DNA of 64,000 bases from Octopus sinensis (taxonomy: Eukaryota): NCBI RefSeq assembly GCF_006345805.1, contig NC_043000.1, forward strand, positions 143,716,001 to 143,780,000. The letters run 5' to 3'. Positions 42-60,359 of this stretch are shown here, in pieces. How positions within the stretch are numbered: position 1 is the stretch's first letter; each line of letters begins with the position of its first letter. A program made the translations under genes and the position numbers. The notes beneath the pieces were generated by a model. It saw nothing but the letters and a program-made list of their open reading frames with translations, ran no database searches and was not told the origin of the DNA.

Positions 42-270
42 CATACACACACACGCACACATGGTATAAGTTAGTGGTGTTTAAACCCTCTTAGGGATAG
101 ATGTATCCAAAGGCACTCCTGATAATTACCTCAGTAATTGGTATAAGTTATACAGTAGCATAGTTCAATGTATATATAGACAACAAGAAAATGGAGGAAA
201 AACAACACTGAGAAGTGTATTTGGCGCTAAAGAGCGTTTATTTAATCAGTTAAGCAGTTAAGTCAGAGCG

Positions 271-349
271 AGTTTACAGCTGTTTCAGTGTAACATACTG
301 GGGTAAATATGTATTTACCTTGTTGCAAATGGTGGACATCATCAGATCT
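271..349 (-). ncRNA. Degenerate type-I hammerhead ribozyme motif in the pLTR
   Basis: Minus strand reads agat-CTGATGA-...-GAAAC-AGCT-GTA-aact: intact core, 2-bp helix III closed by the palindromic tetraloop AGCT, GUA cleavage triplet. Helices I and II are imperfect. Confidence 0.6.
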
Positions 350-697
350 AAGACGGCAGAGATAGACAAAGAGGAGAATAGAGCGAAAGATAGATGGAGA
401 AACCGGAACAGAAAATGTTCAATGATTCGAAAGTTTTAGATTTTAGTTAGGTTCAAAGTTCATTAAATCTATTCTGAGGTAGATGAAGAATAGAGGTTGG
501 TTGTATCTAAGGCCTCGTAGTTAGTTATTAGCATGACTTCCACGTTACTACCTGTCCGGCTAGTTGACCACCGGTGTAACCTGAGGGAGTTATCCTTAAT
601 GAGGGATATACGGTGTGGTTATTAGATCCTATGTGTGACTATCATATAGGTTGTAGGTAGTTCATATATTTAAGTAAGGGTAAATTTTATATATATA

Positions 698-928
698 TTT
701 CTTTACTACCCACAAGGGGCTAAACACAGAGGGGACAAACAAGGACAGACGAAGGGATTAAGTCGATTACATCGACCCCAGTGCGTAACTGGTACTTAAT
801 TTATCGACCCCGAAAGGATGAAAGGCAAAGTCGACCTCGGCGGAATTTGAACCCGGAACGTAACGACAGACGAAATACGGCTATGCATTTCGCCCGGCGT
901 GCTAACGTTTCTGCCAGTTCGCCGCCTT
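698..928 (-). mobile_element. tRNA-derived SINE family 1, tail variant b, full length
   Basis: Minus strand: aaggcggcgaactggcagaaacgttagcacgccgggcgaaatgc...gggttcaaattccgccgaggtcgactttgcctttcatcctttcggggtcgat...gccccttgtgggtagtaaagaaa. A/B-box-like head; ttttatatata on both sides may be a TSD; many copies in the window. Confidence 0.9.
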
Positions 929-1339
929 CATTTTATATATAGCATTTTTATATATAGCGTAAATTTTATATATAGCATCGGTACGATTTAGCGTGTAAAT
1001 AGACAAAGTATCTGAATAATATCTAGGTTTGAGGAGAGCAAAGAAAAGAAAAGGAAAAAGATAGGTAGGGGAAATTTGGCATATAAAAAGAGTTGGTAGT
1101 TCTCGACTGAATGAATTATTGGATAAAATTAGGCAAGCGTAGTATGTAGATTAGGTATATTAATTATTTATCGATAATGTGGGTTGGAGTACACTAGTGT
1201 AGAATATTAATTAGGCATATTAATTATTTATTTATAACGTGGGATGGATATGCGTAAGCTAGTTAAGGTATAGGTACATTAAAGGGAGTTAATACACTGA
1301 TAATTAGGTACTAATAATATTTACGCTAGGTGATATTGG

Positions 1340-2417: not shown

Positions 2418-3240
2418 TATTATTATCATTATTATTATTATTATTATTATTAACCGTGTTAGTATTCCTAATTTTATTATTTTTCACATTGTTGGTATTA
2501 CTTAGTTATCATTTTTAATGTTGTTAGTTATCTAAGTTTGAATCATATCATTATTTCCAATTTTCGTTTTTTTTATTATTGGTTTTAATCTTATGCTGTG
2601 CTTGTGTTGTTCTTCTTGTTGATGTGATTGTTATTTTTCTTTGGAGAGTGTTTAGTGTTGTGATAATTGTCTTGTGTATTTAATTCGTTCCGGTTATTTG
2701 AATAGTGCTCTAAGTCTAGTTATGTATTTTTGGTTTAAAACTTCTTCTTTTTAATGCGCTATTGTAGAGTCTCTTATACTTATTAAAGATATCTTGGCTG
2801 GAAGAGAGGAGTGAAATTCTTTTGCTGCTGCTATGTACAAGCCCTCTTTTAATAAAGTTCGGACCGTTACTTGATGCGCTTATTGATTTGATGTTTGTAT
2901 TAGGTTTTATGTAGAGTTCGTTGAATCCCGCGGTTAGGTTGCAGTTGGCGTCTAAGTAATTTATACAGCTCTATTCCTTTTCTATAGTAATATTTTGGCC
3001 GAATCTTTTTTAAAATTTGTATAATGTTTTCGTAATCAGTTCTTTTACTACGAATAGTGTGTCGTCCCTATATAGCCCACGCATCATTTCTGGGAATTCT
3101 CCCTGTAGGTGTGATAACAAAAAAATTGCCTACTAAGTCTGTTACCTGTACTGAATCTGGGGATCCCATGGTGATATCGAAGTTGTTAGGGGAGTCTTTA
3201 CTTATAATTCATTCACTCGAGATCTACCAACTATGTTTAC
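1340..3240 (-). pseudogene. Penelope-type reverse transcriptase C-terminal half + GIY-YIG endonuclease, with stops and frameshifts
   Basis: Hand translation of the minus strand: FDITMGSPDSVQVTDLVG and LLSHLQGEFPEMMRGLYRDDTLFVVK (~3180-3040); KRISLLSSSQDIFNKY (thumb); RIIDKHLKLNNKY; CQFSNRCKTINVIYQCDV...PYIRSTKNEIKLRHNSHQSSF...IWELKD...RILAKTSSYSINNKRCEFYITE (GIY-YIG region). An Asn-type (AAT)n linker lies at ~2330-2450. Confidence 0.88.
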
Positions 3241-3258
3241 ATGTTTAATTTCCAGTTT

Positions 3259-3888
3259 CTATCTTTTTCTTTTTCTCTTCTTTGCACTCCTCAAACCTAA
3301 ATATTAGTCTGATACTTTGTCCATTTGCAGGCTAAATCGTACCGATGATAAATATAAATTACCTTTATTTACGGCTTCCTTTGTTAATATACGTACCACC
3401 TACAACTTACATGTTACTGACACATAGGTCCTAATAACCTCACCGGATATCTCTAATTAAGGGTAACTCCCTCAGATTACACCGGCGGTCAACTAGCCGA
3501 ACAAGCAAACACGCGGAAGTCATGCTAATAACTAACAGCAAAAATTTAGAGTCAACCAACCTCTATTCTTTATCTGCCTCACAATGGGTTTAATGAACTT
3601 TGAACCTAACTAAAATATAAGACTTTCGAATCATTGGTCATTTTCTTTTCTGGTTTATCCCGATATCTTTCGCTCAATTTTCCTCTTTGTCTATCTCTGC
3701 CGTCTTCGTTCTGATGACGTCTACCATTTGCAACAAGGTAAATACATATATAACTCAGTATGGTACTCAGAAACTGCTGTAGACTCACTCTTACTCTCAC
3801 CGTGCTTGACTATTTAAATAATCGTTATTTTTGTACCAAGGACACACTTCTCATTGCTGTCTTTGCTCCATTTTCTTGTCGTCTATAT
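3259..3888 (+). repeat. Inverted pseudo-LTR arm of Penelope element 1
   Basis: Diverged reverse complement of 173-1064; lacks the SINE insertion. Confidence 0.85.
3708..3784 (+). ncRNA. Degenerate type-I hammerhead ribozyme motif in the inverted pLTR
   Basis: gtt-CTGATGA (3711-3717)...GAAAC-TGCT-GTA-gac (3770-3784); helix I gtt/gac can pair. Homologous to 271-349. Confidence 0.55.
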
Positions 3889-5036
3889 GTACGTATATAT
3901 ATATATATATACATAGATAGCTAGATACATACATCATAAATGCATACATATATATGTATGTATGTCTGAGGACTTAATTGCCATTGTTGAAATTCCTGTG
4001 CAAATTTTGTTTCTGATTTGGAAACCAGTTACTCGTGATTCGTTTGAAAAATAAAACCAAAAGGTACATAGATTCACATCCACAGACATAGAATTCCTGC
4101 TTAATAATCTACTTCCCTTATTAGAAATGTGGCAAATTGGTATTGTTTTCCAATACAGAGACACAATTATCAGTGCGAAACTGACTGGCTAATTGAACAC
4201 TTAACATGTCTGAAAACCTATAATCGAATGACAGAATGATATTTATTCTAATTTGCACAGTAAATTTTCCAGAATGTCGAACATTCAGAAAGCAGGCATG
4301 TGTCAGTTTGGAAAGAAAAAGAACGTGAGTAGGTAGTAAGAACGAGGAATAATTTCTTCAAATACACACGTGATAATTTCGACCAAACGCGTTTGAAACA
4401 ATCATTTCTGGAGTAGCTTCTCTGTTGCTTGGAAGAAATCATAAGCAACTAAAAGTTCCTAATGCACCCGACGCATCATTTGAGCTCTTATTAACTCTAC
4501 AATTATTTATACAATAATTAGCAATAATTATCATTTATTATTAGACGTTTCCCATTTATTATATGTATTATCAGCTTTGCAGCAGTAAGCATTCTTTGAC
4601 TTTGCATGTGGCACTTATTCTGAAATAGCACTTTTTAAATAAGCTTAACATTAAAATATCTGGAGATGCAGAAGTAATAGGCGTTGCTTTAGTTACGGTA
4701 TTAGATCATCTCCGACAAATATAGCCTGCTCTTTCATACATAAACAAATGTGTGTTGAGTCATGGAAAAGAAATAAGAAGACAAGTATAAACCGTCAGTT
4801 AGAAAACTTGTATCTAGACACACAAGATTTAATGTCAGCGGTATCTATATATGAAATCTTAAGAGCTACTCAATTTCATTCCAAAATGTTCAAAACAACT
4901 CCTCCAACAAAGAAAAATTTAGCGATTTTTATTGAGAAAAATGCCTCGACGCTGCCACACTTTGTTGTATGTAGTAGCCGAATCTGCATCGAATCGAGAC
5001 CCTCACACACGTGCGAGCAGGCACACGCACCCCCCA

Positions 5037-5596: not shown

Positions 5597-5682
<86 letters not shown>

Positions 5683-5987
5683 ATGTATGTGTATGCTTGT
5701 ATAAATACATATGTATATATGTGTATATATAGAAAGAGAGAGAGAGACGTACACGTACATACATACACACGTATGTATGCAATCAGGTATGTGTATGTAT
5801 ACAAGTTCAATCAGTAAAAGAGAGCATTTATTAAAGATATGATTCCGTATAGTTGGATATCACAGCTCCAAATTCATTCGGACTAACATATATATAGCCT
5901 TGTGGGGAATCCATAATATGTTATATAGATAGAGACCCTTATAAATCATATGCAAGCATGCGCATGCAGATTTAAGGGATGCCACTC

Positions 5988-6445
5988 TAAGTTGCAATTG
6001 AAGGCATGTTCTGTATTACCACTATGGTGACTAGGACTTGCATATTTCACTATTTGATCTTCAAACCTAGTTTGACGCTTAATTTGCTCGAGATTAAGTA
6101 CCTGAATAAGAAAGTAAGCCATGATAAACAGTGTATTCGTGGTTTATGTAAATTTCCAGAAATAAAAATTAACAGGTGAAGAGAAAGTTGATATGTAAAG
6201 AGAATTTAATATATATATATATATTAAATTCTCTTTACATATCAACTTTCTCTTCACCTGTTAATTTTTATTTCTGGAAATTTACATAAACCACGAATAC
6301 ACTGTTTATCATGGCTTACTTTCTTATTCAGGTACTTAATCTCGAGCAAATTAAGCGTCAAACTAGGTTTGAAGATCAAATAGTGAAATATGCAAGTCCT
6401 AGTCACCATAGTGGTAATACAGAACATGCCTTCAATTGCAACTTA
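5988..6445. repeat. Perfect 458-bp palindrome centred in a (TA)n tract (centre 6216/6217)
   Basis: 5988-6216 is the exact reverse complement of 6217-6445 as far as checked by eye (taagttgcaattgaaggcatg ... catgccttcaattgcaactta). Confidence 0.95.
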
Positions 6446-6832
6446 ATTTTGAAAGGCTGTGAGATCTGGAAAGGTGCTATGTTTTAATTTAAACAGTTTT
6501 TTGGACGATGATCATAAAAGTCGCTATTAGGTTTCTTTGTGCATCTTTTTGTATTCTGCATTTTCTGCCTTGGTTTTATATCATCGCCACTATAAGCGTC
6601 AAGCCAAACTCATTTATCTATCTTTCTATGTATGTATGTATGTATGTATCTAAATATCTATCTATCTATCCATCTATCAATCTATCCATCTGTCTATCTA
6701 TCTATCTGTCTGTCTGTCTAATTATCTCATCTATTCTATCTGTCTATTTATCTATTTACCTATATGTGTGTATTAGTGCTTCTGTGAGCGTGCCAATGTA
6801 TAAACATTTGTATATGTATTTATACATAGTTT

Positions 6833-6868
<36 letters not shown>

Positions 6869-6980
6869 ATATATACATTATGTGCCGTTGTCTATCTACA
6901 TATATGTGTGTATGTATGTGTCTGCACTCACGCTTGTATCCCTCTGTGTGTGTAAATGCGTGTATGAATGCATGTACACT

Positions 6981-7024
<44 letters not shown>

Positions 7025-7409
7025 TATGTATAAATACATATACAAATGTTTATACATTGGCACGCTCACAGAAGCACTAATACACACATATAGGTAAATA
7101 GATAAATAGACAGATAGAATAGATGAGATAATTAGACAGACAGACAGATAGATAGATAGACAGATGGATAGATTGATAGATGGATAGATAGATAGATATT
7201 TAGATACATACATACATACATACATAGAAAGATAGATAAATGAGTTTGGCTTGACGCTTATAGTGGCGATGATATAAAACCAAGGCAGAAAATGCAGAAT
7301 ACAAAAAGATGCACAAAGAAACCTAATAGCGACTTTTATGATCATCGTCCAAAAAACTGTTTAAATTAAAACATAGCACCTTTCCAGATCTCACAGCCTT
7401 TCAAAATTA
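6444..7409. repeat. Apparently perfect inverted repeat, ~414-bp arms (6444-~6857 / ~6996-7409), ~140-bp spacer flanked by (TA)n
   Basis: The arms are reverse complements, including an irregular (CTAT)n tract. The ORF track gives the same N-terminal peptide (MIIKVAIRFLCASF...) on + from 6508 and on - from 7345. Confidence 0.95.
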
Positions 7410-7614
7410 TCACTATTCACTCAAACTGCCACAAACCCAAACAACGCATAAAGGAAACATTCCAAAATAGATCTTTGATACGAATACATTGTTTCCTTCT
7501 ACGTATGGACAAATCAAAAATTTTTAGAAAAAGGGATAATTTGTTATTCTCTAACATAGACTTGTCCCAAAATTCATCATGAGCTCCAGTTTTCATATCC
7601 TGATTTACTCTTGC

Positions 7615-9620: not shown

Positions 9621-10695
9621 CATGTTCACGTAGGTACGCACATAGTGACAGGCGCACACACATACATGGCCTCGTGGACACACATACACGAATCACGTAG
9701 GAATACCGATAAAGGCAAGCATTCACACACACATATACATGTACACACATTTAGACATTGACATGCATACACATAAAGATAAACACACGCACTCAAACAT
9801 TTTTTCCTATCAAGTTACATCGAACATATTTGACTACAGTGGCGCATTTTTCTTTTAACTGGCAGCGCTACAAACATCTCCTTCTAGACGACTTAACGTA
9901 AAAATATATTAGTCTGTGAATAGGCCACATGCGATTCTACAATGTTACTCTCCATTTAAGAATAACAAATCTACATTGCACAGCAAGAATTAAATGATTC
10001 GTTTATATATTAGAACAGAAAACAGTACATTTGCTCTCGGGTGTGAAATATACTCAAAATATAATTACTTATGTAATGTTTCACGAAGCTGCGTAAAATA
10101 AAATATTTCCATATAAAGTCTCAGTCGAGGACATGCGTAAATGATAAAAATTTCGCTACAGAAATAGTCCGAGAAGAAGCGTATCCTAGATGACATGTGT
10201 GGAAACGCCTTTGGTTGTGAATGAAATTATTAGATCATGCGACGAATGCGTTTCTGCGTTTGCACACGTCATCAGCTAAGACATTCAAATCTGCTTCTTG
10301 CAGCTCAAAAATTAACGTGCCACATTTAAATACAGTGTGTGCACATACATTCAAAAAGGTTCGCTAACTGACGTTCTGAGAAAATAATGCTTGTGGATTT
10401 CCAAAGTTTAATTTTGTTTCCTACTGTCTTTTGTGAGCACATACATTCCATCCTCCTACCCGACACACTTGCAAATGAATGTTCTTATTTATAACAGTCA
10501 CAAACACACACAGTTGTACATTTATGTGAACTGTTTGTGATAACAGTTCTCTTTGCTGCAAATATTCAGTGAAATATTCTTAACAAGCAATGAATCCTAA
10601 AACGGAAGTAAGAGTAGAGTAAGCAAGCCCATATCATAGAACTTTAGCATAATTTTATATACGACTTGTTAAGATCACTACCTCATTATCATATT

Positions 10696-10904
10696 CTTTT
10701 CTATCTTAGGCACAAGGCCTGAAATTTGGGTGGAGGGAGGCAGTCGATTAGATCGACCCTAGTACGCAACTGGTACTTAATTTATCGACCCCGAAAGGAT
10801 GAAAGGCAAAGTCGACCTCGGCGGAATTTGAACTCAGAACATAGAGACGGAATACTGCTAAGCATCTCGCCCAGTATGCTACCGCTTCTGCCAGCTCACT
10901 GTTT
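10696..10904 (-). mobile_element. SINE family 1, tail variant a, with 17-bp TSD
   Basis: Family 1 core present; perfect direct repeat tacctcattatcatatt at 10679-10695 and 10905-10921. Confidence 0.92.
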
Positions 10905-14539: not shown

Positions 14540-15200
14540 ACACATGACACAAAAGTATCTCAAATTATACAAAACCTTGGAAAAATTGTGCATCTACAAC
14601 GGGACCTCGACGCAATATCCAGGTGGGATGAGGACAACAACATTCAGTTTAATGTAGTAACATTCCAAGCCCTACGCTACCGACACACAAGGCTGAACGA
14701 CAACCAGACAGTATACACTGGCGCCGGACGAACTGCAAACCCTGAATCAGGATCAATGCGTGATAAGAGCATTGTCATATGCAATGATGCATCTTTCCAG
14801 TTCACTCTCACTAAGTTGGAAATAAAATGGGCACGGCTATCTGGATGGATCCTCCGCACTTTTAAACTGAGAGAAAACGAGATTATGAGAGGCCCTCGGA
14901 GGGCCTATGTCCTCAGCTGATTTGCACTACTGATCGCAACTATGGTTATTACGCAGTATATTAACGTCAGAACTCGAAGCAATCCAACGACGTTACATAA
15001 GGAAAATCGACTCAATGCAGCATATCAGCTACTGGTAAAGGCTGAACGAAGGCAGAACAGATATGAAGTGATATCCATCTGGAAAATCTTGGAAGGCTTT
15101 GTACCAAACTTTGGCATTGAAAGTTACACAAACAGCATAAAGGGGCAGCATTACATGGTTCAGAAGAGCGTACCTCACGGTAGGAAACACTGTTTAGAGC
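14540..15200 (+). mobile_element. CR1/L2-group non-LTR retrotransposon, RT C-terminal fragment
   Basis: ORF 14375-14920 tail HDTKVSQII...[20 protein letters not shown]...[13 protein letters not shown] matches the (FA)DDTK...LQxDLDxIxxWxxxNxMxFN...GWILRTF pattern; continues as ELEAIQRRYIRKI...RYEVISIWKILEGFVPNFGI. Confidence 0.85.
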
Positions 15201-15393
15201 AGCAGTAAGAATCATTCTCATTCAACAAATGCCACATATCAGTGGAAGTTTTAAATTATTGTGTAGCTCAGCAAACGGTGGCGATATACATGTATATAGG
15301 TATGGCTGCCTACAGGGAATGTGTTTACATAAATATATGTGTACATTGATACGAGTATATGTCATGTACAAATAAATCTACATATATATATAT

Positions 15394-15554: not shown

Positions 15555-16087
15555 CACACACACATGCACTTATACACGTATAAATATCTATAATTCTCAG
15601 AGAATATATCTTTGTACTTTTATATATCTTTGAATGATTTAAGCATTTATTTTAACGGTTTTTAATAATAGATACCTTTTAAAAGTCTCGCTACCGAGAA
15701 GATTTATTATATTACAATGCAGTAATATTCTGAAAACGAGAAGATGTATGATATTTTGAACTCTGCGATGTCTCATATAAGTTACTTTCATCTCTTAGTG
15801 CCATTTAAATGTACTGGCTTTGCATGTCGTTTCAGCATTTTGCCATCCAGCATTAGTACTATTGGCCTTGATCTACGATATAACTATGATGCTATGGATG
15901 TGCATCTTACGCAGTTTGCAAAATGGGTTGGTTTTTATTTTTTATATTTTTCCCCCTTTCTTTCTTCTTTATACATATATACATACGTACACCTATATTT
16001 ATATATATGTGTGCATATATATATATATAGATATATGTTTATATTTATATCTATGTGTGCATACATGTATATATATGGGTGCGTGTG

Positions 16088-16143
<56 letters not shown>

Positions 16144-16207
16144 AATACATATTATATATGTATGCATATATATGTATGTGTGTATACATTATATATAATA
16201 TATATAA

Positions 16208-16243
<36 letters not shown>

Positions 16244-17068
16244 AGATAGATAAATATATACACACACATATATATATATATATATTTGTTCTATGAATAT
16301 CAAAGTAACATACGATTCCTTGAAAATATTAATCGCCATAAGATGAATACTTTAGATTTCGAGATGATTTAATATTTTTATTTTTATTTTCCCTATTCTC
16401 AGTTTCTAACATTGGGATAAAAGATTGCTTTATTTTTTTTTTTAATTCATTATGGAACGTCTTATGCGAGGCGAAACGATTTACTACACTCGAAGCTTTG
16501 TATTGTAGTTAGCCATATTTTTCGATGAATGTGCATATATGTCTCTATATATGCCGGAAATATAGCAACTTCTGATATTTAGAAAACGATAGAATGTATT
16601 CGAGGAGAGAAACAGAAAGAATGAGAAAGGAGACTAATGTAATTCCATACTGTAGATTTATATTAGAACATTAGTATATATAAATGTATTATGATAAATG
16701 AAAATTTTTTTAGAGAGATGTAATATGGCGTATGTAATATATATATGAAGCAAAATAGTAGAACGTAATCATATGCAATTGTACATTCAAGCATATACGT
16801 GTATGCATACACACACACACACACACACATATATATACATACATACATACATGGTGCTTATTCGTATATATACATGCGTGTGTATGCATGTGTGGTCGAA
16901 ATATATATATATATGTGTATATATATATGTATATGTATATGTATATGTATACATATATATATATATATTATATATATATATATATTATATATATATATAT
17001 GTATATATATATATTATATATATATATGCATATGTATATATATACATATATACGCATGTGTATATATA

Positions 17069-17143
<75 letters not shown>

Positions 17144-17158
17144 GTGTATATATATGTA

Positions 17159-17208
<50 letters not shown>

Positions 17209-17588
17209 TATACACATAAGACAGACATATCATCAAACACCTCCTGTAAGTATCGAACTCTGTAAGTGTTGCAAATCGCACTGCACGAACCACTTCATCA
17301 CTACTTTCCGCTACACATTAAATCATTTAACAAAGCAGCTACGGTTATTTAGTAGAGATTTACCATTTCAATTCTCACACTATCAAGTTCATTATAACAT
17401 AGGTACATTTTTACTAGTACAGGGCGTTTAGTACATTGGTATATCATATGAGCGTTGTAAATTATTTTTTTTATTTTAGGTAACTTGTTTGATATTATAC
17501 ATACTCGTCCATATCTGTATAATCTATATTTATTCATCTATTCATCCCAGATGTGAAATTCATTGTAATGAGTATTATCATATAACCG

Positions 17589-17681
<93 letters not shown>

Positions 17682-17793
17682 ATAGATAGATAGATATACA
17701 GTACTTTATATATTTTTATATATGTATATATATGTATATTGTGCATTATATATTTTTATATATGTATATGTATGTATGCATATATATGCATAT

Positions 17794-17837
<44 letters not shown>

Positions 17838-28200: not shown

Positions 28201-30519
28201 ATGGGCTCTGAGCTTCTCGGTGTGTAATATTAGATTGTGTCAGATGCGTGTGTACGTAACAGTATTGGTTAACTTAACTGCTAAGAGTATAACTTTGTGT
28301 ACATAACTAAAAAATTCTGGCTCCGAAGAATAAGGTTGGCCTTGCAACTGCAGTTTTAGTGATGTTGACGATGTACGTATGATAAAAGAAATCTTTAATC
28401 ATGTCGAACCTTAACATTTGAAAGGACATTGACCTTTCTTGTGTCATATGTTTTAAAGTAGAATTAGTGGTAAATAATAATTTTCTCAATACTTGTATTA
28501 TGCAGTGTAAGAAACTAGTCACGAAACTAGTGATCACTATTTCAGTATCAGTTTATATTAATCATGAGTTGTCGAGATTGCAAATAAAGAACTCATAGTT
28601 ATATGTTAATTGGGATAAAAAGTAGCATCAATGGTGTTGATGTTGGAGCCTTTAAGAGTTGGGGCAAATATTTATGTAATTTGTAGAAGACAATATAAAG
28701 AGAATAAAATAGAAACATGGAACACACAGAAGAATTATACTCAGCGAGAGGGTAAAAGACATAAAGAAAATTGCATCACTTCTTGATTGGTGTGATATGA
28801 ATGGAAGCTACTGGTGAAAGAATAAAATGGACGGATGGAGTAAATTGTCCGATAGTAATGGATTTCGATTTAGGACTGGTCCAGCAGCTTTAGAGGGTGG
28901 GGTTCAATCGCTAATACGCACAGACACAAATACATACATGCATGCTTGTATGCAGTCACATTTCGATATCCTTCCAATGCATTTCTCAGTTGTAATTATG
29001 AAAATCTTTACTTGACTGCTTGTTTACTTTGTTGTCTTTCACACTTCTGGCGTGTGATATTTGTTTACATGTAAACGTCACATTAATTTGATCTTTAACT
29101 TTGTAAGAGCTGTTATATATATATTTATGTAGTAATTATAATATATTTATACTACTATCATCTCAAAGCCACATGGTAATTTGTCACCATTTTCTGTACT
29201 ATGGAATACTTTGTGTTGACACGCTCCCTTTTTCAACACTCTGGGTAATAGCTTGACTTCATTATTTAGGTATGAATACATACTGTTAGTTGGAGCATAT
29301 TTATCGGGCCAATATTTATTTTAGAGTCTCTGCAATGTAATGGCAACTAAGAATGCTTTGCACAGTATTCATTTTCAAAATATGTATAACAATACTCTCT
29401 AATTCTGCTGTGCATTAAATAGCGATTTCGCTACACAACTTCATTTGTTCCAAGCATTTAGTTCCTAGAGGATATTCTATTTCATTTAACGCTTATAAAT
29501 TACTAAGTCAGACAATTTTTTTTTATTAATCTTAATGTTTCAAATTGTTCTTGGTATATTTGTTTTCAGATATTCCATTATCTATATAATAAATTGTTCG
29601 TTAGCATTTTCTCGAAGCAATTTTGAATCACATGTCATTGTATATTCCTGTGGAACTATCGTATGTAATGTTCAATATATTGAAACATGCTTATGCATAC
29701 AGACCGAAAATTAAGAAGTAATTAAGTCCCTCTAATTACAATGTGACAATTTATTCATATATTCGCTTACACATACACATAGGTAAATTGACTGAGTATA
29801 TGTGCATATTTTAATACTAATTATTAGAAGTTGTTAATATTAAAATTCAAAGATGAAAAGACAAATACGTTCGAAATATATTTCCAGGACCATCGATATG
29901 GAAACGTTTATATTTTCTAATCAACATCGTTATAAACATACAGCTATTCACGTGCACACACAGACGTATACACACATACGGACACACACACACACACATA
30001 CATTCCCACGCACAGACACACAGATTTCCGCAGAGACACGACAGACACTACTCTCTAACATTACTACAAAAGAACATATTTTTGGAGAAGTGTAATCCAT
30101 GAAGGTATGAAAATTATGTTTTGGATATATATTTGAGACAAGTACAGAAGATGAAAAACAAAGCAGATATCGATGAAAAACGAAAATACGAAATACGTAA
30201 ATAATAAACCATTATAACTTGTAACGATTTTCATATATTTGCACACACGCAGATATAGTGGCAGTGTATGTGTACACATCTATGTTGTACCTGAAACAAG
30301 AGCAACAACGACAACAAATAATAATAATACTGATGATGATGATGATGATGTCCTGTTTTAGTAGATTGACAATATCAAGCATTAAGGACTAATTCGATAA
30401 AAGCTAAGATGACAAAAACCAAGGAGATTCTCAATATAGGTTATGCAAATAAAAAGAGGTAAATGTTACTCATATGGTTAATGAAGAAGGTAGACACGAT
30501 ACCACAAGTAATTGGCAAA

Positions 30520-30830
30520 TTGTTCAAGAAGATTGGAAAAGGGATTTGTGATAAATTTGTGCAGTATACATTTTATGAAATGCAGAAATATCGTCAAAGT
30601 TATTGGTTTTATTAAAAAATACCAGAAAACTTTAAATTGAAGTCAAAATTAAAATTGAATATGAGCACATGAAAGCAGTAGTAAACGTTTGTGCGCTGTC
30701 AGGGACGATTTAAGTATCAGCACTGAACATAGCTAAAAATGATTTGTGCAAGTGTGAAAGCAGAACACCTACAAAAGTCGGCATTGCTTGGACCTGCAAG
30801 AATCCTTCGCAGGGTTCTCGAAGCATGACC
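30520..30830 (+). mobile_element. 3' coding end of an R4/Dong-like (RLE-type) non-LTR retrotransposon
   Basis: Remnant KYQKLKIEV, then EHLQKSALLGPARILRRVLEA* (~30763-30828), the canonical C-terminus of R2/R4-type RLE ORFs. Confidence 0.65.
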
Positions 30831-31814
30831 AGTAAGTAAGTATCTCAAGTGGCATGTGCGCGTATATTTCTATGCTGCTTTGCTATGACTGAGCATGTAG
30901 TTTGTTGACATTTTTCCTGTTATGTGCTTTTGCATTCCACGCTTAATGCTACCATGTATGTTAACAATAGGATTGGTTATGCGAAAATGTCTAATATGTG
31001 TATGTACTCATGCCATTTAAATGCGTTTGTGTGTGTGTGTATGTGTGTGTGTGTGTGTGCAGTGATTGCCATGCGTATAGAGATGTGGATATTTTATGAT
31101 GTAAATGTTAGTGACTGTATGCGAATATATGCAATGCGTGTGCTTTGTGATTGTATGATTATAGTGCATTCTGATATGACTATGTATGCATATGTGTTAC
31201 ATTTAAGTGAGGTGATAGTGTGTCGATTAAAGGAAAATGTTTTTAGTATTTGAGTCCGTGCAGAGTGGATACTTGAGGAATAAATTTGAGCTCCTGTTTA
31301 CACTGGAGTGGAGATTCGTACGACCCGCTGAATAGAACAACGTCGAAAATAGATTGATACCGAGCAGAGTGTTTCTTTGAGTGCTGCTTTCATTCAGTAG
31401 AGCAGCCAGATTAACGTCATTCAGTCTGGAACTGCAGAGCGATCATATTTAGCAATAAATGGCATCGTTTGCGGTCGTTGGCATGTGAAAGGAACAGTGG
31501 TGAGGTCCAGTGAAAAGGGTGGTGCTGAAAACTCAGAGGCAGGACTGTCGGCGGAGAAGAGAATAAGTGATTCAGGATGGGTTAAGATCACTATACAGAG
31601 GAAGGTTAAGTTTGAGGAACCGAAGGACAGATATATGTATATATGTATATAGTTTGATTTGAAAAAACCCACTAGAAGGGGAGAAAGCGCTAATGATCTA
31701 AGTGATATGATATATATATATAAAAAATGTAATATACAAATAAATATCTGTAAATATAAACCATCTGATCTTCTGAGTACCTCATTTCTTCTAATATATA
31801 TATATATATATTAT

Positions 31815-31916
<102 letters not shown>

Positions 31917-32099
31917 CATAGATAGATACATACATATATATATATATACATAGAGAAAGAGAGAGAATGAGAGAGATGGGGAAAGAGAGAAAGAGAGAGA
32001 GGGGGAAAGAGAGAAAGAGAGAGAGAGAGTGTGTGATAGTTGTGAGTTGTATGGGTTTCAGATATTCAAATTAAAGTAGTCAACAGCATGGGCTCACAA

Positions 32100-32293
32100 T
32101 GTGTTCAAGAAGATTAGAAAAGGAATTTGTGATAAATTTGTGCAGTATACATTTAATGAAATGATGAAATATCATCAAAGCTATTGGTGTTATTAAAAAT
32201 ACCAGTTTTCTGGTTTTTTTAATAAAATTAAATATGAGCAACACGAAAGCAGTAATAAACATTTGTGCGCTGACAGGGACGATTTATGGATCA
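32100..32293 (+). repeat. Second diverged copy of 30523-30720 (RLE-type LINE fragment)
   Basis: gttcaagaagatt.gaaaagg.atttgtgataaatttgtgcagtatacatt...tttgtgcgctg.cagggacgattta is shared by both positions. Confidence 0.8.
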
Positions 32294-32559
32294 GGGATAT
32301 TCAGAAACAACCCCAGAATATTGAATATGATGACTATACTTGGAATAATCCACACAAATTGTGACGTTCTTCGACTTCCACTGCAGACGAATCCTGGAGT
32401 AAGAGACTTGATTAGTTTCGTGGAATGTAAACGCAAAATATAAAAATATCTCCATAAGAAATGAATTGAAAATATAAAGCTAATCGAACGTATCATTTCT
32501 TGACTGATGTGAAAACGACTGTTATGACAGAGGTGACAAATGCCTTCATAAGGATGGGT

Positions 32560-32561
32560 TG

Positions 32562-32619
<58 letters not shown>

Positions 32620-32785
32620 TAAAAATAAAAATAAAACTTATAATAAAAATAATAATAATAATTAGAAGAAGAAGAAGGAGGAGGAGGATGAGAGGAAAAA
32701 GAAGGAGAAGAAGGAGAAGAAGAAGAAGAAGAAGAAGAAGAAGAAGAAGAAGAAGAAGAAGAAGAAGAAGAAGAAGAAGAAGAAT
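32560..32785. repeat. Compound (TAA)n-(GAA)n microsatellite
   Basis: Direct reading of the sequence. Confidence 0.95.
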
Positions 32786-33430
32786 GAAAAGTAGGCTTGC
32801 TGCAACGAAATAGCAAAGTATAGACAATGTGTTAGATGACAGGAGTACCGATACACTTGACCAGGCAATGTGGAAGTGGATACGAAACCAAAACCTAAAG
32901 GTCAGAGATGAACTGTTAATATGTGAGACACAAGAAGCAGCGGCAAGGAAGTACATAAACCGCCATAGCGATAAGAACGGTGACGTTGAATTATCTTTAT
33001 GTACTTCGGGGAAATGAAGGAGGAACCATTAATCACAGTGTAAGTATATGTAGCCCTCTTTCCACTAAGAGAATAAAAAAAATGTCAACATATATCTCAC
33101 TGGACTTTATGCGAGAAAGTAATTTGGACATAGCTAATATGTGGTGAAATATCAATCGAATGCGAGGAAGAAAATTAGAATATTAAGTTGTAAAATTTGA
33201 AGATTCAATACGAAGGAGGAGAGGCAAGTTATTGTCAATGTGAACAGGAAAAGTTATGGAACAACGGCTGAAATGCAATCTTTGTGTGATAACAGAATGT
33301 GGGGGAAAATAAACAAGGGCAAAAAAATATCAAGTTCTAAAGAGACTTCTAAGAATTGTGCAACATCAGTAAAGCTGAAATGGTGTTTGTCTGAGGACAC
33401 TAGAACTGAAATTCCAGCAGAACTGTTATA
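32785..33430 (+). mobile_element. R4/Dong-like non-LTR retrotransposon fragment (CCHC knuckle + restriction-like endonuclease)
   Basis: MWKWIRNQNLKVRDELLICETQEAA (cf. WxWLxxGxLKxETExLIxAAQEQA), GTINHxVSxC, HWTLC, EENxxIKL..KIQ and KKYQVLK remnants appear in the expected order. Confidence 0.75.
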
Positions 33431-34952
33431 GAAACAACAGTAACCTAATGAAGATACCCGAAGACTAAGTTTATAAAACACTATCATAATACTTTTGGTC
33501 ATTGGTTTTCAAAAGCGACAAAAGTCCTTCTTGCGACAGTGTCTATGAAAATATCTATTTATGATTGACATGGACAGGTTTTTAAATGTTGGTGTTCATA
33601 GTGAAAACAAACGATTGAGAAAATATGTCTGTGAATGTAAACACATTTCATTAAATTGCATATTGTTCAAAAGGTATCACCATTATCTATGGTCAATTAA
33701 ACCCCAGGGAACTGACTACCAAATGTTAGTTCTTTTACTTTAACTCCTAGCCTGCCGGTGCATGCTAAGAGTAGTGTCTTTCACTCGGGCCATAAGCAAC
33801 AATTTCACTTAAATCTGCTCCAGTCCTCGACTGTTTTTTTATTTATATCGCTCCCATTCTGTCACTCGTTTTATTTTGTATCTTTTACTTGTTTCAGTCG
33901 TTAGAATGCGTCTATACTGGGGCACAGTGTACGTTTTACCTTTAGTTGCATATTAAGTGTTTTGACACTTTTATTTGGCTAAACTACATTAAAGCCAGCG
34001 GTGAAATTTCTACAAAATGCTCGCTCCATATGTTAGAAATAACAGTCAAATCATTTCCCTATAACATCTTATCACGGACACCTTAGATTATGTAGATTTA
34101 TGGCATAGCTGAAATGCCATTGGTTGTAGGTGTGCTCGGTCAAGTGAGACCTAGAGTTAAACAGCTATAGTAGTACTAGATTGTGTAATTGTTATATATT
34201 GTCTTTGTTGTATCTATACCTTTTCTTTTAGAATGCAAGGGTGCAGTCTAAGGGAAATTTGGCTACTATTTCAAGCAGGCCGATCGACTAAGTTGAGTCG
34301 TCCCTTCTGGTTACTCTCGATACTGTTGTCTTTGCCGTTATGTTTGTCACTGCTGCTGATAGAGCTAATGACGATGATCATCATAGTGGTGACGGTGAAC
34401 ATAACACTAAGAACGGTAATGGCAGCGTATATGGTTATACTCTTCATATAAACATTTTGAAACGAAGCTCTAAACAGATAGTAGGCGGAGAATATTTACG
34501 TAAACATTGTCACGTAAACACAATTTCCCCAATTATAATATTACAGCCACTTTATTGTTTGCTGTAACAACAACGACACACTATATCATATTTACTTATC
34601 GACAATATAGACAGACACTACAGCTCCTAGTATTAAGTCATGAGCCAGTTAAAGATGCTCTCGGAATATATTCTAAATCGATATTAGATTCATTTTAATC
34701 AATTCGAAATAAAGCTGTCTGGATAATGGAAAATTACAGGCCAAACCTACTCGATTTCATTTTCATATATTTATATAACAACCTCCCCTCTCTCTCCATC
34801 CCACTCTCTCTCTCACCTTCTCTGTCTCTCTCTCTCAGTTTCAATATCTATCAATGCGTCCGCGTAATCAATATTTGTACATAATATAACTAGCAGCATA
34901 TATGCCGACTCCTATCTATCTGTCCTCTTATCTATTAATTGTATCTACCTGG

Positions 34953-38474: not shown

Positions 38475-38584
<110 letters not shown>

Positions 38585-40272
38585 ATATATATATTTAGTT
38601 TATATTTACAGTGTACTCGAACTCACATAATTAAGAAGCGAATTTCATAGCTGTACAAATATCCTTCCATATTACGACGTATAATTTGATATAATACGTA
38701 ATATAATTTACTGCTCATAGTTATTAACAAAGTTCCAATAACACTGGAATAATTGTAATGATTAAACTTTACCTTTTAAAAATTTGCAATAATCTGTATC
38801 ACCGCATTCCTATATTTTCCCACTTTAATTGTTCTTACAATATTGAAATTTTCGCTGCACAATTTGTTAATTCATATTAGATGCCGATAATATATATTAA
38901 TATAGTGGTTTATATGTGTGAATCTAAATGGTCGATATTACAACTTTCCTTGAAGTGATATCGCTCTACTTCATCTCATACAAATGATATGACATGTAAC
39001 ATAATATCATTACTATGGATTATTAACACGTTAAGGAGTACTGGCAATCACCGCGCTCTAACTGATAACAATTCCCTTTATGATCGTATGTTCCCTTTAT
39101 GAAATCATCAATCGACAATATGACTCCGTAGAAAGAAACTGAGATAGGATCAATTTATATATTCTATGTATTGCATGGTTTGTGAAATGATCAGTTCTCT
39201 ACTTCTAAATACACAATTGTGTGTAGATTCAAAGGCGGCGTTAATCGATGTATTGTATTCGTGGTTTTCTTTTTAACGTATATTTGATATTTCAATTGAA
39301 TTTTGAGATTAGCTCTATTTCTGGCACACATATTATGGTATTCTGTCGAAAATAATATGGTAGAGTATATGCAGATTTCTTTGAAGAAATCAGATTTAAT
39401 TTCGAGCATATCTGTGAAATACTTCATTATGTATGATATTTTGTAAATATTTTCTTTGGGAATTCAAGCGTAGTTCATTTTGTAAATTAGTCTTTAGGAT
39501 ATCCTGTTTATAAAACTATAAAATATATTATATGTGTCGCAGAATTAAATAATAGTTGTGTTAAATAGTGAGAAAAATATGAGTGGCATATGTAACATCC
39601 GCACTCTAGGAAACTATACACGAAAATATGAAATGGAGAAAACGCTGAGAAGTAAATGCATGGGTATCACCCGCAGAAGCACACCTGCTTATTTTATGCA
39701 GCATTTGCAACTACAGACTCACGAACCAAAGAATAAGTTTGTGTATTATACCTCAGATGAATATAGTTGTAATTCAAAGTTGGGTTCCATTAAGTCCTGT
39801 ATTTTCACTATAAAAAAAATTAATGCAAAAATTTACAAACTGCAATTTGTAGAAAATATCAAGAGGTTACCGATATAGCAATATCACTCCGAACCGTTAT
39901 ATATTTCAACCTTTGTCTACGCCAGTATGACTTTAACCATTGTTTGTTGGCAAAATAAAAATTAGCACATTGCGAAGTTCCCGTATAAAAGCATTCATGG
40001 AGTTTCGAGGAATACAATTAATTATTCTTGATGTGATGGCCGTATTTTAAAGTAATAAAAGAGTGGATTTGATTATTTCTATTATTATCAGCCAAAGATC
40101 TCGTATATCAAACCAGATGCTTTATCAAGGAGCCACAGCTCAGATATTTAACTTTTACATGTACTAAAGAAGATGACATTACAACGGCCGGGTGGCTTTT
40201 AGTCATAGTCTTGGTGATAAAATTTGACATGAAGCTAATCTACATCCTAAAGAAAACTCTCTGTGCAGAGAA

Positions 40273-54337: not shown

Positions 54338-55009
54338 AAAAACGCCGGTTTATTAGATTTTCATACTTAACACTACGCCAATGTTGATCGAACATACGCA
54401 TGATCGGAACACTTTGAAGAAGCTATACCTACACTATGTATATTATCGGTATGTTCTCTTTCTTTAAGAGAACATTTGATTACAGGGGCATTTTAACAGA
54501 TTATGACATTTTGTGGGTCAAGAGAAAGTATATATCAATGCCAGGGAGCCCAATGTTGAAACTACAATGATTAAAATTTGAGACATGTATAAGCGGTATT
54601 CGTGAGATACCGTTCTAGGTTAGATCGTGTGTTACTTAAATATTAAAGTTGTTCACCAAATGCATTTGCTTCTAGAATAATCTTGTATATAATGGGCCGA
54701 GGCTAAAAGAAATCATCCACGTAATCCCTAAATCTGCTAGACATAGCAGCTAAATTCTATCAGGGTATATTATATGGGTTTTTTGTCTGAAAACAGACGA
54801 ATTTGTTGTGCGTACATGGGACATGATACAAATGGTATGTCTTTGATTATATGGGAACACAGTCATAGATGAAAGAGAACCAATAACGAAAAACAACAAC
54901 AAAGCGATAGATTAGACACAACCACACTCGATACCCTTCACTTGAAAATAATGGTTTATTTATTGGTATGAAGAGAGTCACATACCTAAATCAGCAATAT
55001 TAAAATATT

Positions 55010-55222
55010 CTTTTCTACTCTTAGAACAAGGACCTAAATTTTGGGGGAGGGGGCAGTCGATTAGATCGACCCCAGAACGTAACTAGTACTTAATTTATCG
55101 ACCCCGAAAGGATGAAAGGCAAAGTCGACCCCGGCGGAATTTGAACTCAGAACGTAACGGCAGACGAAATACGGCTACGCATTTCGCCCGGTGCGCTAAC
55201 GTTTCTGCCAGCTCGCCGCCTT
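55010..55222 (-). mobile_element. SINE family 1, tail variant a, full length with TSD
   Basis: Intact head and core; near-perfect 17-bp direct repeat agcaatattaaaatatt (54993-55009) / agcagtgttaaaatatt (55223-55239). Confidence 0.92.
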
Positions 55223-56215: not shown

Positions 56216-56724
56216 TTGTGTGTATGCAGACTTTCATGAATATATTTTATGCTTCATGAATCTAGGTTCAGTGTTGCCGTTTATTAAAACGATTGTACTA
56301 AAAGAGCTTAAACATGTGTGCAAGAAAAATTTAATACGATTTCTCAATGTTGGCAAGAAAAATTAAATACGACTTCTCAATGGTAGAATGTTAGACCATG
56401 GCTGCCTAAATAGGAATCCCTCGAAACGAATGATCGGGCTAAATATGATATACTTTCGGTCTTTGCCGAAATTTTAAAGATAGTAGCTACAAGCATTGGT
56501 TTACGTTGTATGTAGCTAATTTATCATATCATGAACAATGGTCTCAAATGCAATATGAACCATGAATATAAAGTAACGTAATAGCAATAGTTTTCGCATG
56601 TATGTCCGCAAATCTTACACGTATTTAAGACTTGAAGGCAGCTAAATAATAATTGATATATAAATACATACACACGCAGAAACACACACATACGTATGAA
56701 TATATATATATATATATAATATAT

Positions 56725-56793
<69 letters not shown>

Positions 56794-56812
56794 TATATAT
56801 ACTATATATATA

Positions 56813-56901
<89 letters not shown>

Positions 56902-57438: not shown

Positions 57439-57741
57439 CTAATCTAAGCACTGGTTCGCAACTGGTATTTAATTTATCGATCCCAAAAGGATGAAAGACA
57501 AACTCAATCTCGACATAATTTGAACTCAGAAAGTAAAGACAGACGAAATACCTATTTCTAATTCTTTACTACCCACAAGGAGCTAAATACAGAGGGAACA
57601 AACAAGGACAGACAAAGGGATTAAGTAGATTATATTGACCCCAGTGCGTAACTGGTACTTATTTAATCGACCCCGAAAGGATGAAAGGCAAAGTCGACTT
57701 GGCGGACTTTGAACTCAGAACATAACGGTAGACGAGATACC
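57439..57741 (-). mobile_element. Head-to-tail dimer of headless SINE family 1 units
   Basis: Two consecutive family 1 cores on the minus strand joined by gtagtaaagaattagaaataggtatttcgtctg (~57540-57570). Confidence 0.88.
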
Positions 57742-59955: not shown

Positions 59956-60281
59956 TTTGTGGAAACTTTTCTCCTGGGAGATACCTCACCGTAAGCTGTT
60001 AAATTCAAGCTCTATCACACAAGAGTCTTGAGCCGAGGGAAGTTTGTAGCTTTGTGTAATAAAACTGTCGTGAATGGCCATAAATGACTAGCTGGTGCTA
60101 TTGATTTATGTGTACGGCAAGCAGGTTGTGTGTAGAGGTCGACGGAGTTTCTCTAGAAACAGTAATAGGATGGAATCAACGATGGAATGGAAATAGACAA
60201 AGAGTGAAACAAATAGATGAGAGAAACAAAGCAACAGGGTGAAAGTAATAGATCTTATTCATATACATATATATATGTATG

Positions 60282-60323
<42 letters not shown>

Positions 60324-60359
60324 TATATATATATATATATATATATATAGATATATATA

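What the first reader, a model, noticed from the sequence alone, without database searches (positions are those of the whole stretch)
5988..7409. Perfect double palindrome that resolves as an inverted, circularly permuted copy of its own flanks inserted at a (TA)n tract
Seen: the order is A-(TA)n-A'-B-(TA)n-S-(TA)n-B', with arms identical even across unstable (CTAT)n repeats. Deleting 6217-~6857 restores a plain A-(TA)n-S-(TA)n-B' locus. The A'/B junction (6444-6445) is exactly the reverse complement of joining the far end of B' (caaaatTA, 7409) to the start of A (TAagttg, 5988) through a 2-bp TA microhomology. Inference: a ~0.8-kb local circle, opened at the self-complementary (TA)n, was put back in reverse orientation. 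This is either genuine eccDNA re-integration or multi-step template switching, or a chimeric circularised library fragment stitched in by the assembler. If real, it would extrude cruciforms or yield two long perfect hairpin RNAs.
Basis: partly seen in the sequence, partly recalled or inferred. Interest (0 to 1): 0.7.

Follow-up and report, generated by a model that had tools for sequence, protein, structure and literature searches.

The report
Two adjacent perfect palindromes at (TA)n tracts
A 641-base insert made of backward copies of the DNA on both sides of a short TA repeat, most likely a scar of break repair in which each broken end folded back and copied itself; whether it is in the animal or only in the assembly cannot be decided without reads.

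Summary
5988-6445 is a 458-nt perfect palindrome centred in (TA)7. 6444-6857 and 6996-7409 are 414-nt perfectly complementary arms around a 138-nt spacer. They are the only long near-identical non-simple repeats in the 64 kb.

The "circular permutation" junction is not independent evidence for a circle. Any two adjacent perfect inverted repeats have that property. The only extra fact is a 2-nt TA overlap, and random joins in this window reach 2 nt or more 18% of the time.

A simpler model reproduces the sequence base for base:
- one break in the left (TA)n tract;
- each resected 3' tail ending in self-complementary TA folds back, the left on itself and the right on the next (TA)n, leaving S as the loop;
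- each tail copies its own flank, 229 and 414 nt;
- the two new ends join at TA.

This is fold-back or snap-back templated repair, known from yeast and Drosophila, but here on both ends and with unusually long tracts.

I could not get reads or another copy of the locus, so an in-vitro or assembly chimera remains a serious rival at about 0.3. The region has no genes, adapters or transposon features. Interest is modest.

The parts
5988..6209 (+). A: unique left flank, the template of the left fold-back copy. Its first two bases (TA, 5988-5989) are the mirror of the junction TA.
   Evidence: Single copy in the window apart from its inverted twin.
6210..6223 (.). (TA)7, centre of palindrome 1 (symmetry axis between 6216 and 6217). 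Proposed site of the break and of self-priming by the left 3' tail.
   Evidence: The fold puts a 4-nt loop here.
6224..6445 (-). A': perfect reverse complement of A, the newly made copy in the model. It ends at the position that mirrors 5988.
   Evidence: 100% over the 458-nt palindrome.
6444..6445 (.). TA shared by the outer ends of both inverted repeats: a 2-nt self-complementary microhomology at the only junction that is not in a (TA)n tract.
   Evidence: Random joins in this window reach 2 nt or more in 18% of trials.
6444..6857 (-). B: perfect reverse complement of B' (the newly made copy in the model). It includes the interrupted (TATC)n array 6615-6763 and ends in (AT)12 at 6834-6857.
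6858..6875 (.). (TA)9, out of phase with the preceding (AT)12 (TT at 6857/6858). [quoted passage not shown]
   Evidence: The model requires the phase break to be ancestral. A similar (TA)n-T-(TA)m tract lies at 5601-5642, and a TA array at 38549-38595 has a phase-broken consensus unit.
6876..6982 (+). S: 107-nt single-copy core of the spacer, present once and in forward orientation. It is the loop of the right-hand fold-back.
6983..7020 (.). (TA)19, the second tract. The right-hand 3' tail is proposed to have annealed here. 12 of its units lie inside the arm and 7 in the spacer.
6996..7409 (+). B': right flank and template of the right fold-back copy. It ends in TA (7408-7409).

Best explanation
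A 641-bp templated, inverted insertion made in one repair event at a broken or stalled (TA)n tract. It is a structural scar, not a gene or a mobile element.

Inferred ancestral locus: X - A - TTTAA(TA)m T(TA)9 - S - (TA)19 - B' - Y.

Steps, all inferred:
1. A double-strand break, or a collapsed fork, falls in the left TA tract. Such tracts form hairpins and cruciforms and are cut by structure-specific nucleases.
2. Both ends are resected, leaving 3' tails that end in self-complementary TA.
3. The left tail folds back on its own TA and is extended along A for 229 nt, making A'.
4. The right tail, on the bottom strand, anneals to the next TA tract 138 nt away, leaving S as the loop. It is extended along B for 414 nt, making the second copy.
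5. The two new 3' ends (...CAACTTA and ...CAAAATTA) pair through TA and are filled in and ligated.

The product is X-A-t-A'-B-t-S-t-B'-Y, exactly as observed. A replication version, with three template switches at TA, TA and (TA)n, gives the same product and cannot be told apart from it here.

Consequences, shown only as predicted folding energy: two very stable hairpin or cruciform-forming units. If transcribed, they would give long perfect hairpin RNAs.
For: - The model reproduces 5900-7500 base for base for 78 combinations of tract partition.
- The inner boundaries of both inverted repeats lie in (TA)n, and the spacer carries TA tracts at both of its ends. Such tracts cover only 3.4% of the window. 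The chance that two independent boundaries fall in them is about 1e-3.
- S is single copy and forward, as expected if it was the loop.
- The one junction outside TA tracts has 2 nt of microhomology. That matches the median 2 bp seen when fold-back products are captured by the other end in yeast (PMC11724301).
- Precedents: snap-back SD-MMEJ (PMC5728401, PMC2943611); fold-back inverted insertions of 2 to about 150 bp with a 41-nt loop, dependent on Pol delta (PMC11724301); fold-back priming at resected inverted repeats (PMC10622511); cleavage of AT/TA repeat structures (PMC12972899, PMC9890227).
- A and B are unique sequence with no other copy in the window. No significant protein-family matches to the ORFs tested in and next to the structure.
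- No adapter sequence was found.
- Only this locus among 57 TA tracts shows the pattern, so it is not a systematic assembler habit at TA tracts.
- Human PATRRs of about 190-600 bp show that palindromes of this size persist in germlines (PMC1851657).
Against: - No read, second assembly or orthologue could be obtained. So neither the physical existence of the structure nor the ancestral state is shown.
- The copied tracts (229 and 414 nt) are longer than any documented snap-back insertion (up to about 150 bp).
- Two-sided fold-back at one break has not, to my knowledge, been described.
- The model needs the extra T in the left tract to be ancestral.
- A spacer-free 458-bp palindrome is expected to be unstable, so it must be young. 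Zero differences in 643 paired sites give an age below roughly 2e5 to 2e6 generations. Zero divergence is also what an artefact would show.
Confidence: 0.5

Rival explanations
1. The structure is an artefact that is not in the animal's genome. Three routes are possible. (a) A chimeric molecule made by polymerase template switching in vitro (whole-genome amplification or PCR-based low-input library) was taken into the consensus or used by a gap-filler. (b) A real 781-bp tandem duplication was mis-traversed at the self-complementary (TA)n hubs of an assembly graph, with the B'A node walked backwards and one S dropped. (c) A polishing or local-reassembly step created it.
For: MDA chimeras are 85% inverted, local, intramolecular and primed at 2-21 nt of complementarity (PMC1855051). 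Amplified long reads are rich in artificial palindromes (bioRxiv 10.1101/173872, Pacasus). The arms are perfectly identical even across microsatellites. TA tracts are self-complementary graph hubs. No independent support for the locus was found.
Against: Known fold-back read artefacts are whole-read palindromes with the break in the middle of the read: about 0.6% of ONT gDNA reads and virtually none in HiFi (PMC12338684). Here the arms stop after 229 and 414 nt, and unique flanks run on for 6 kb and 56 kb. Three junctions within 1.4 kb is far above the MDA rate of one per 10-22 kb (PMC1855051). A single odd molecule is normally outvoted in consensus. A graph alone cannot create the A'|B join, which shares only 2 nt. 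The tracts are short (14-45 nt), while the same assembly crosses TA arrays of up to 375 nt without gaps. No adapters were found. No other such structure occurs at 57 TA tracts or anywhere else in the 64 kb.
Confidence: 0.3
2. A roughly 0.8-kb extrachromosomal circle (A-S-B' closed at TA) re-entered the chromosome in inverted orientation by pairing at the self-complementary (TA)n.
For: The segment from the start of A to the end of B' would be 781 bp. The A'|B junction has the sequence a closed circle would have. (TA)n permits pairing in either orientation.
Against: The junction identity follows automatically from two abutting perfect inverted repeats, so it adds no evidence. A single crossover of an inverted circle gives X-A-t-A'-B-t-S'-t-S-t-B'-Y. 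The inverted S is absent, so an additional precise deletion is needed. This route takes more steps than the fold-back route for the same product.
Confidence: 0.05
3. Two fold-back or MITE-like mobile elements (E1 = 5990-6443, E2 = 6446-7407), each flanked by a TA target duplication, sit side by side. Alternatively, one element has DIRS-like geometry, with an internal region complementary to the joined termini.
For: TA is present at all three boundaries: 5988-5989, 6444-6445 and 7408-7409. The joined flanks would read CACTC-TA-TCACT, a plausible empty site. The internal complementary region of DIRS elements has the same geometry (my own knowledge).
Against: There is no second copy of A, B or S in 64 kb, although a SINE-like repeat occurs at least six times. 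Cut-and-paste elements do not regenerate arm identity, so 0 mismatches in 643 nt across microsatellites is unexpected. All inner arm boundaries fall in (TA)n, which this model leaves to chance (about 1e-3). There are no recognisable terminal repeats shared by E1 and E2. No significant protein-family matches to the ORFs tested in and next to the structure, and no inverted terminal repeats between A and B'. The three TAs are one coincidence, not three, because of the symmetry.
Confidence: 0.07
4. Several separate in-vivo events in sequence: a tandem duplication of the 781-bp segment at TA microhomology, then inversion of the B'A segment between (TA)n tracts, then loss of one S by slippage between TA tracts.
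For: Each step is a common mutation type, and the end product matches. I reasoned this out from the anatomy.
Against: Three independent events would have to happen without a single base or microsatellite-unit difference accumulating between the copies. This is less parsimonious than a one-step origin.
Confidence: 0.05

Closest known systems
Fold-back (snap-back) templated inverted insertions at double-strand breaks: SD-MMEJ in Drosophila (PMC2943611, PMC5728401) and Pol delta-dependent local fold-back inversions in yeast (PMC11724301)
   Same: A 3' tail anneals to an inverted microhomology next to the break, copies its own flank, unwinds and is joined to the other end with 0-5 bp of microhomology. 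The result is a longer perfect inverted repeat. A loop of tens of nucleotides is tolerated (41 nt in yeast, 138 nt here).
   Different: The documented tracts are 2 to about 150 bp and one-sided. Here both ends would have done it, copying 229 and 414 nt, and the primer is a microsatellite rather than a 4-10 nt inverted repeat. No enzyme dependence can be tested.
Template-switch mutations in replication (four-point model; PMC5453318, PMC10710096)
   Same: A single event writes a reverse-complement copy of nearby sequence and creates perfect hairpins from unstructured DNA. It has been proposed as a source of new hairpin RNA genes.
   Different: Those events are tens of bases long with one excursion (two switches). 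This one needs three switches and 641 nt.
Fold-back priming that gives hairpin-capped ends and large inverted duplications (PMC10622511, PMC3907307)
   Same: Resection exposes short inverted repeats, intrastrand annealing follows, and fill-in synthesis makes an inverted duplication with a short spacer.
   Different: There the hairpin is sealed, and a dicentric chromosome with a terminal deletion follows. Here both ends are rejoined locally and nothing is lost.
Human palindromic AT-rich repeats (PATRR11, PATRR17, PATRR22; PMC1851657)
   Same: Near-perfect palindromes of several hundred bp with an AT-rich centre, carried in the germline and prone to cruciform extrusion.
   Different: PATRRs are AT-rich throughout, polymorphic and old. 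Their origin is not established. Here the arms are ordinary unique sequence at 31-32% GC.
Chimeric palindromes from whole-genome amplification and fold-back long reads (PMC1855051, PMC12338684, bioRxiv 10.1101/173872)
   Same: Inverted, local and microhomology-primed junctions with perfectly identical arms.
   Different: Those are single junctions per molecule or whole-read palindromes. This is three junctions within 1.4 kb, embedded in long unique flanks.

Membership tests
Fold-back / snap-back templated inverted insertion at a DSB | The inserted bases are the exact reverse complement of sequence directly adjoining the insertion | tested here: met
   A' = rc(A) and B = rc(B') at 100% identity, each abutting its template through a TA tract.
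Fold-back / snap-back templated inverted insertion at a DSB | An inverted (self-complementary) primer repeat lies at the turning point | tested here: met
   (TA)7 at 6210-6223. (AT)12/(TA)9 at 6834-6875 pairs with (TA)19 at 6983-7020. Chance of such boundaries is about 1e-3.
Fold-back / snap-back templated inverted insertion at a DSB | The distal junction is joined with little or no microhomology (0-5 bp) | tested here: met
   2-nt TA at 6444-6445. Not above chance on its own.
Fold-back / snap-back templated inverted insertion at a DSB | A pre-event allele exists that lacks the insertion | not testable with these tools
   No reads, second assembly or orthologue could be retrieved.
Fold-back / snap-back templated inverted insertion at a DSB | Tract length lies within the documented range (2 to about 150 bp, one-sided) | tested here: not met
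   229 and 414 nt, on both sides (against PMC11724301). So this works like the family but lies outside its described range.
eccDNA re-integration | The whole content of the circle is present at the insertion | tested here: not met
   An inverted copy of S is absent. S occurs once, in forward orientation.
eccDNA re-integration | The circle junction is independent evidence of circularisation | tested here: inconclusive
   The junction is present, but it is implied by two adjacent perfect inverted repeats.
DIRS-like retrotransposon | ORFs for reverse transcriptase, RNase H and tyrosine recombinase | tested here: not met
   Only short or low-complexity ORFs occur in 5850-7560, and there is no Pfam match.
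DIRS-like retrotransposon | Inverted terminal repeats, plus an internal region complementary to the joined termini | tested here: not met
   The internal complementary geometry is present. But A and B' are not inverted repeats of each other beyond microsatellite, and A abuts A' with no room for a body.
MITE / fold-back transposon with TA target duplication | A multicopy family | tested here: inconclusive
   No other copy in 64 kb. The rest of the genome is not available.
MITE / fold-back transposon with TA target duplication | Direct TA duplication at both ends | tested here: inconclusive
   TA occurs at 5988-5989, 6444-6445 and 7408-7409. By symmetry this is a single coincidence (P about 0.18).
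Fold-back read artefact (long reads) | Whole-read palindrome with the break near the middle of the read; adapter possibly at the centre | tested here: not met
   The arms end after 229 and 414 nt while unique flanks continue. No SMRTbell, ONT, Nextera or TruSeq adapter within 5800-7600. Read-level data are not available.
MDA / amplification chimera | The library was made by amplification, and the junction is seen in one molecule only | not testable with these tools
   The source and method of the assembly are unknown.

The most novel reading that the evidence does not exclude
The structure is real and germline. A single recent repair event at a (TA)n break, with long-tract fold-back synthesis at both ends, turned 0.8 kb of ordinary unique DNA into two abutting perfect palindromes with 229- and 414-bp arms. 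That would be a natural one-step birth of a PATRR-like cruciform site, and of two long hairpin-RNA templates. It would also extend snap-back repair by about threefold in tract length and to both ends of one break.
Probability: 0.45. Interest if true: 0.5.

Novelty: new member of a known kind. Interest (0 to 1): 0.3.

Why it matters
If it is real, it is a clean natural example of how microsatellite (TA)n tracts seed long perfect palindromes in one step. That bears on the unexplained origin of palindromic AT-rich repeats, on how new long-hairpin (endo-siRNA or miRNA-type) loci arise, and on how far fold-back synthesis can run in an animal germline.

If it is an artefact, it is a useful test case. 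Its junction pattern (three switches inside 1.4 kb, no adapters) is one that current fold-back and chimera filters, which look for whole-read palindromes, would not flag.

Either way it affects no gene that I could recognise.

Tried and rejected
- **Independent copies of the locus.** Exact look-ups of five window ORFs found nothing. These ORFs span the X/A, A'/B, B/S and S/B' junctions and the Y flank. Two exact-pattern scans of metagenome contigs with unique 31-33-mers of A and B' also found nothing.
- **Identifying the organism.** There were no tRNA or Rfam hits. A reverse-transcriptase-like fragment gave one weak hit. A literature search for the SINE core 20-mer found nothing. The window is a eukaryote at 33% GC, rich in microsatellites. 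From memory, the SINE-like repeat resembles the abundant octopus SINE; this is not verified.
- **Coding or RNA gene in the structure.** Rejected. It holds only short or low-complexity ORFs with no Pfam match, and there was no Rfam hit.
- **Dispersed repeat or transposon.** No other copy in the window at word size 9.
- **DIRS-type geometry.** Considered and rejected; see the membership table.
- **Recurrent process or assembler habit at TA tracts.** I compared the flanks of all 57 merged (TA)6-or-longer tracts for inverted similarity. Only the three tracts of this locus exceed the control.
- **Adapter or linker at the junctions.** None found.
- **TA microhomology as evidence.** Not significant.
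- **Shared motif in the two outer termini (TTGAAGGC and TTGAAAGGC).** Judged compatible with chance; this is a by-eye estimate and was not computed.

Full report
**1. What is there**

- 5988-6445 is a 458-nt sequence identical to its own reverse complement. Its axis lies between 6216 and 6217, in the middle of TTTAA(TA)7TTAAA. The symmetry breaks at the very next base outward.
- 6444-6857 and 6996-7409 are 414-nt arms, 100% complementary and separated by 138 nt. They also break at the next base on both the inner and the outer side.
- The arms include a 149-nt interrupted (TATC)n array that is identical in both (6615-6763 and 7090-7238).
- The two inverted repeats overlap by the dinucleotide TA at 6444-6445.
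- The inner end of B is TTTT(AT)12. It is followed out of phase by (TA)9 CATT, then 107 nt of single-copy sequence (S), then TTG(TA)19 AAAC, which leads into B'.

**2. Is it more than chance, and is it a repeat family?**

A self-BLAST of the 64 kb finds no other repeat of at least 60 nt and at least 97% identity outside simple sequence. A, the unique part of B, S and both outer flanks have no other copy in the window, even at word size 9. As single strands the two units fold at -268.7 and -492.8 kcal/mol, 56 and 67 standard deviations beyond shuffles. ORFs inside the structure are short or low-complexity and match no Pfam family. There is no Rfam or tRNA hit in the window.

The window itself is eukaryotic: 33% GC, no N, and dense in (TA)n, (TG)n, (TAT)n and (TATC)n arrays of up to 375 nt. 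It carries a SINE-like repeat in at least six copies. I could not identify the organism. From memory the SINE resembles that of octopuses; this is unverified.

**3. The 'circular permutation' is a tautology**

Write the structure as A t A' B t S t B', with A' = rc(A) and B' = rc(B). The junction end(A')+start(B) is then necessarily rc(end(B')+start(A)). So the exact match adds nothing beyond the fact that two perfect inverted repeats abut.

The only independent datum at that junction is the 2-nt overlap. In 20,000 random joins within this window, 18% had at least 2 nt of microhomology. For the same reason the three TA dinucleotides at 5988, 6444 and 7408 are one coincidence, not three.

**4. 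A one-break model that reproduces the sequence**

Assume the plain locus X-A-TTTAA(TA)m T(TA)9-S-(TA)19-B'-Y. It measures 781 nt from the start of A to the end of B'.
- A break falls in the left tract and both ends are resected, leaving two 3' tails that end in TA repeats, which are self-complementary.
- The left tail folds on itself and copies A back to position 5988.
- The right tail, on the bottom strand, anneals to the next TA tract, leaving 7 TA units + S + (TA)9 as a 138-nt loop. It copies B' out to 7409.
- The two new 3' ends, ...CAACTTA-3' and ...CAAAATTA-3', pair through TA and are filled in and ligated.

A script that carries out these steps gives 5900-7500 exactly, for all 78 ways of dividing the TA units between tail, pairing and copying.

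The model explains four things:
- why the inner boundaries of both inverted repeats lie in TA tracts and why the spacer carries TA tracts at both of its ends. Tracts of (TA)6 or longer cover 3.4% of the window, so two independent boundaries falling in them by chance is about 1e-3;
- why the left unit has no spacer and the right one has S;
- why S is single copy and forward;
- why the remaining junction shows only minimal microhomology.

It needs one assumption: the out-of-phase T at 6858 was already in the ancestral tract. A similar (TA)n-T-(TA)m tract is seen at 5601-5642, and the TA array at 38549-38595 has a phase-broken consensus unit.

A replication version, with three template switches, gives the same product. 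I cannot separate the two.

**5. Precedent**

- The snap-back branch of SD-MMEJ is defined as annealing of inverted repeats within a resected strand, priming of synthesis, unwinding, and annealing to the other end (PMC5728401, PMC2943611).
- In yeast, local fold-back inversions at an HO break use a 10-nt inverted microhomology with a 41-nt loop. They need Pol32 (Pol delta) and run from 2 to about 150 bp. The other end captures them with a median of 2 bp of microhomology (PMC11724301).
- Fold-back priming at resected inverted repeats also gives hairpin-capped ends and large inverted duplications (PMC10622511).
- AT/TA repeats form hairpins and cruciforms that structure-selective nucleases cut (PMC12972899, PMC9890227).
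- Template-switch mutations are known to write perfect hairpins in one event (PMC5453318, PMC10710096).
- Human PATRRs of about 190-600 bp show that palindromes of this size can live in a germline (PMC1851657).

What is unusual here is the length of the copied tracts (229 and 414 nt) and that both ends would have folded back.

**6. The artefact question**

I could not obtain reads or any second copy of the locus. Five exact protein look-ups across the diagnostic junctions and two metagenome scans were empty.

Arguments against an artefact:
- Known fold-back read artefacts are whole-read palindromes with the break in the middle of the read. They make up about 0.6% of ONT gDNA reads and essentially none of HiFi (PMC12338684). 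Here the arms stop after 229 and 414 nt, and unique flanks continue for 6 and 56 kb.
- MDA chimeras are inverted, local and microhomology-primed, but occur about once per 10-22 kb (PMC1855051). This structure has three junctions in 1.4 kb.
- No adapter is present.
- An assembly graph cannot invent the A'|B join, which shares only 2 nt.
- None of the other 54 TA tracts shows anything similar.

Arguments for an artefact:
- Zero divergence.
- The known instability of spacer-free palindromes.
- A single chimeric molecule could be built in by a gap-filler and then made perfect by polishing.
- A real 781-bp tandem duplication could be mis-walked at TA hubs.

I put the artefact class at about 0.3.

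**7. Other readings**

- **Circle re-integration.** It needs an extra loss of an inverted S, and its main evidence is the tautology above (0.05).
- **Two TA-flanked fold-back elements, or a DIRS-like unit.** These are disfavoured by single-copy status, perfect arm identity across microsatellites, TA-tract boundaries left to chance, and the absence of ORFs and terminal repeats (0.07).
- **A three-step sequential history.** It would need three events with no divergence between the copies (0.05).

**8. Age and consequences**

If the structure is real, no difference in 643 paired sites bounds its age at roughly 2e5 to 2e6 generations, for mutation rates of 1e-8 to 1e-9 per site. Gene conversion between the arms would loosen this bound. 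Predicted consequences are cruciform extrusion, local fragility and, if transcribed, two long perfect hairpin RNAs. None of these could be tested here.

**9. Verdict**

- The best explanation is a two-sided fold-back (snap-back) repair or template-switch scar at a (TA)n tract, at confidence 0.5, with an artefact as the main rival.
- It is a new, unusually large member of a known kind of mutation. It is not a new kind of element.
- Interest is modest until reads decide whether it exists.

Noticed in passing
window 170-1119 and 3204-3892: An older inverted pair. 170-670 matches 3892-3386 at 83% identity, and 965-1119 matches 3358-3204 at 85%. The spacer is about 2.1 kb and contains (TAT)n at 2335-2452. 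The left arm is interrupted by a SINE-like insert (about 690-935) that the right arm lacks. The right arm's outer end abuts a TA-rich microsatellite (3895-3965). There is no other copy in the window. It is either a diverged local inverted duplication or two inverted copies of a dispersed repeat.
   Followed up: partly
window 690-931, 10685-10897, 54999-55222, 57460-57740, 58292-58763: A SINE-like repeat of about 200 nt in at least six copies, including a 2.6-copy tandem of period 184 at 58292-58763. The conserved core is ...GTTCAAATTCCGCCGAGGTCGACTTTGCCTTTCATCCTTTCGGGGTCGAT.... There is no tRNA or Rfam hit. From memory it resembles the abundant octopus SINE, which would make the window cephalopod; this is not verified.
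   Followed up: partly
window 14543-15205 (+): A degenerate ORF that looks like the tail of a LINE-type reverse transcriptase, with an in-frame stop at 14918-14920. It gave one weak database hit that carries PF00078 (E = 1e-10, 37% identity), but no Pfam hit of its own.
   Followed up: partly
window 15994-16285, 16901-17212, 17592-17834, 56700-56895, 60261-60635: Very long imperfect (TA)n arrays of 196-375 nt, assembled without gaps. Several are self-complementary over 100-350 nt simply because they are TA arrays. They are stronger cruciform candidates by length than the tracts at the finding, yet show no flanking inverted duplication.
   Followed up: partly
window 30001-34000: A strong positive GC skew (0.22-0.28) over 4 kb. 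It coincides with long (AG)n and (AGA)n/(ATA)n arrays at 31862-32029 and 32562-32784.
   Followed up: no
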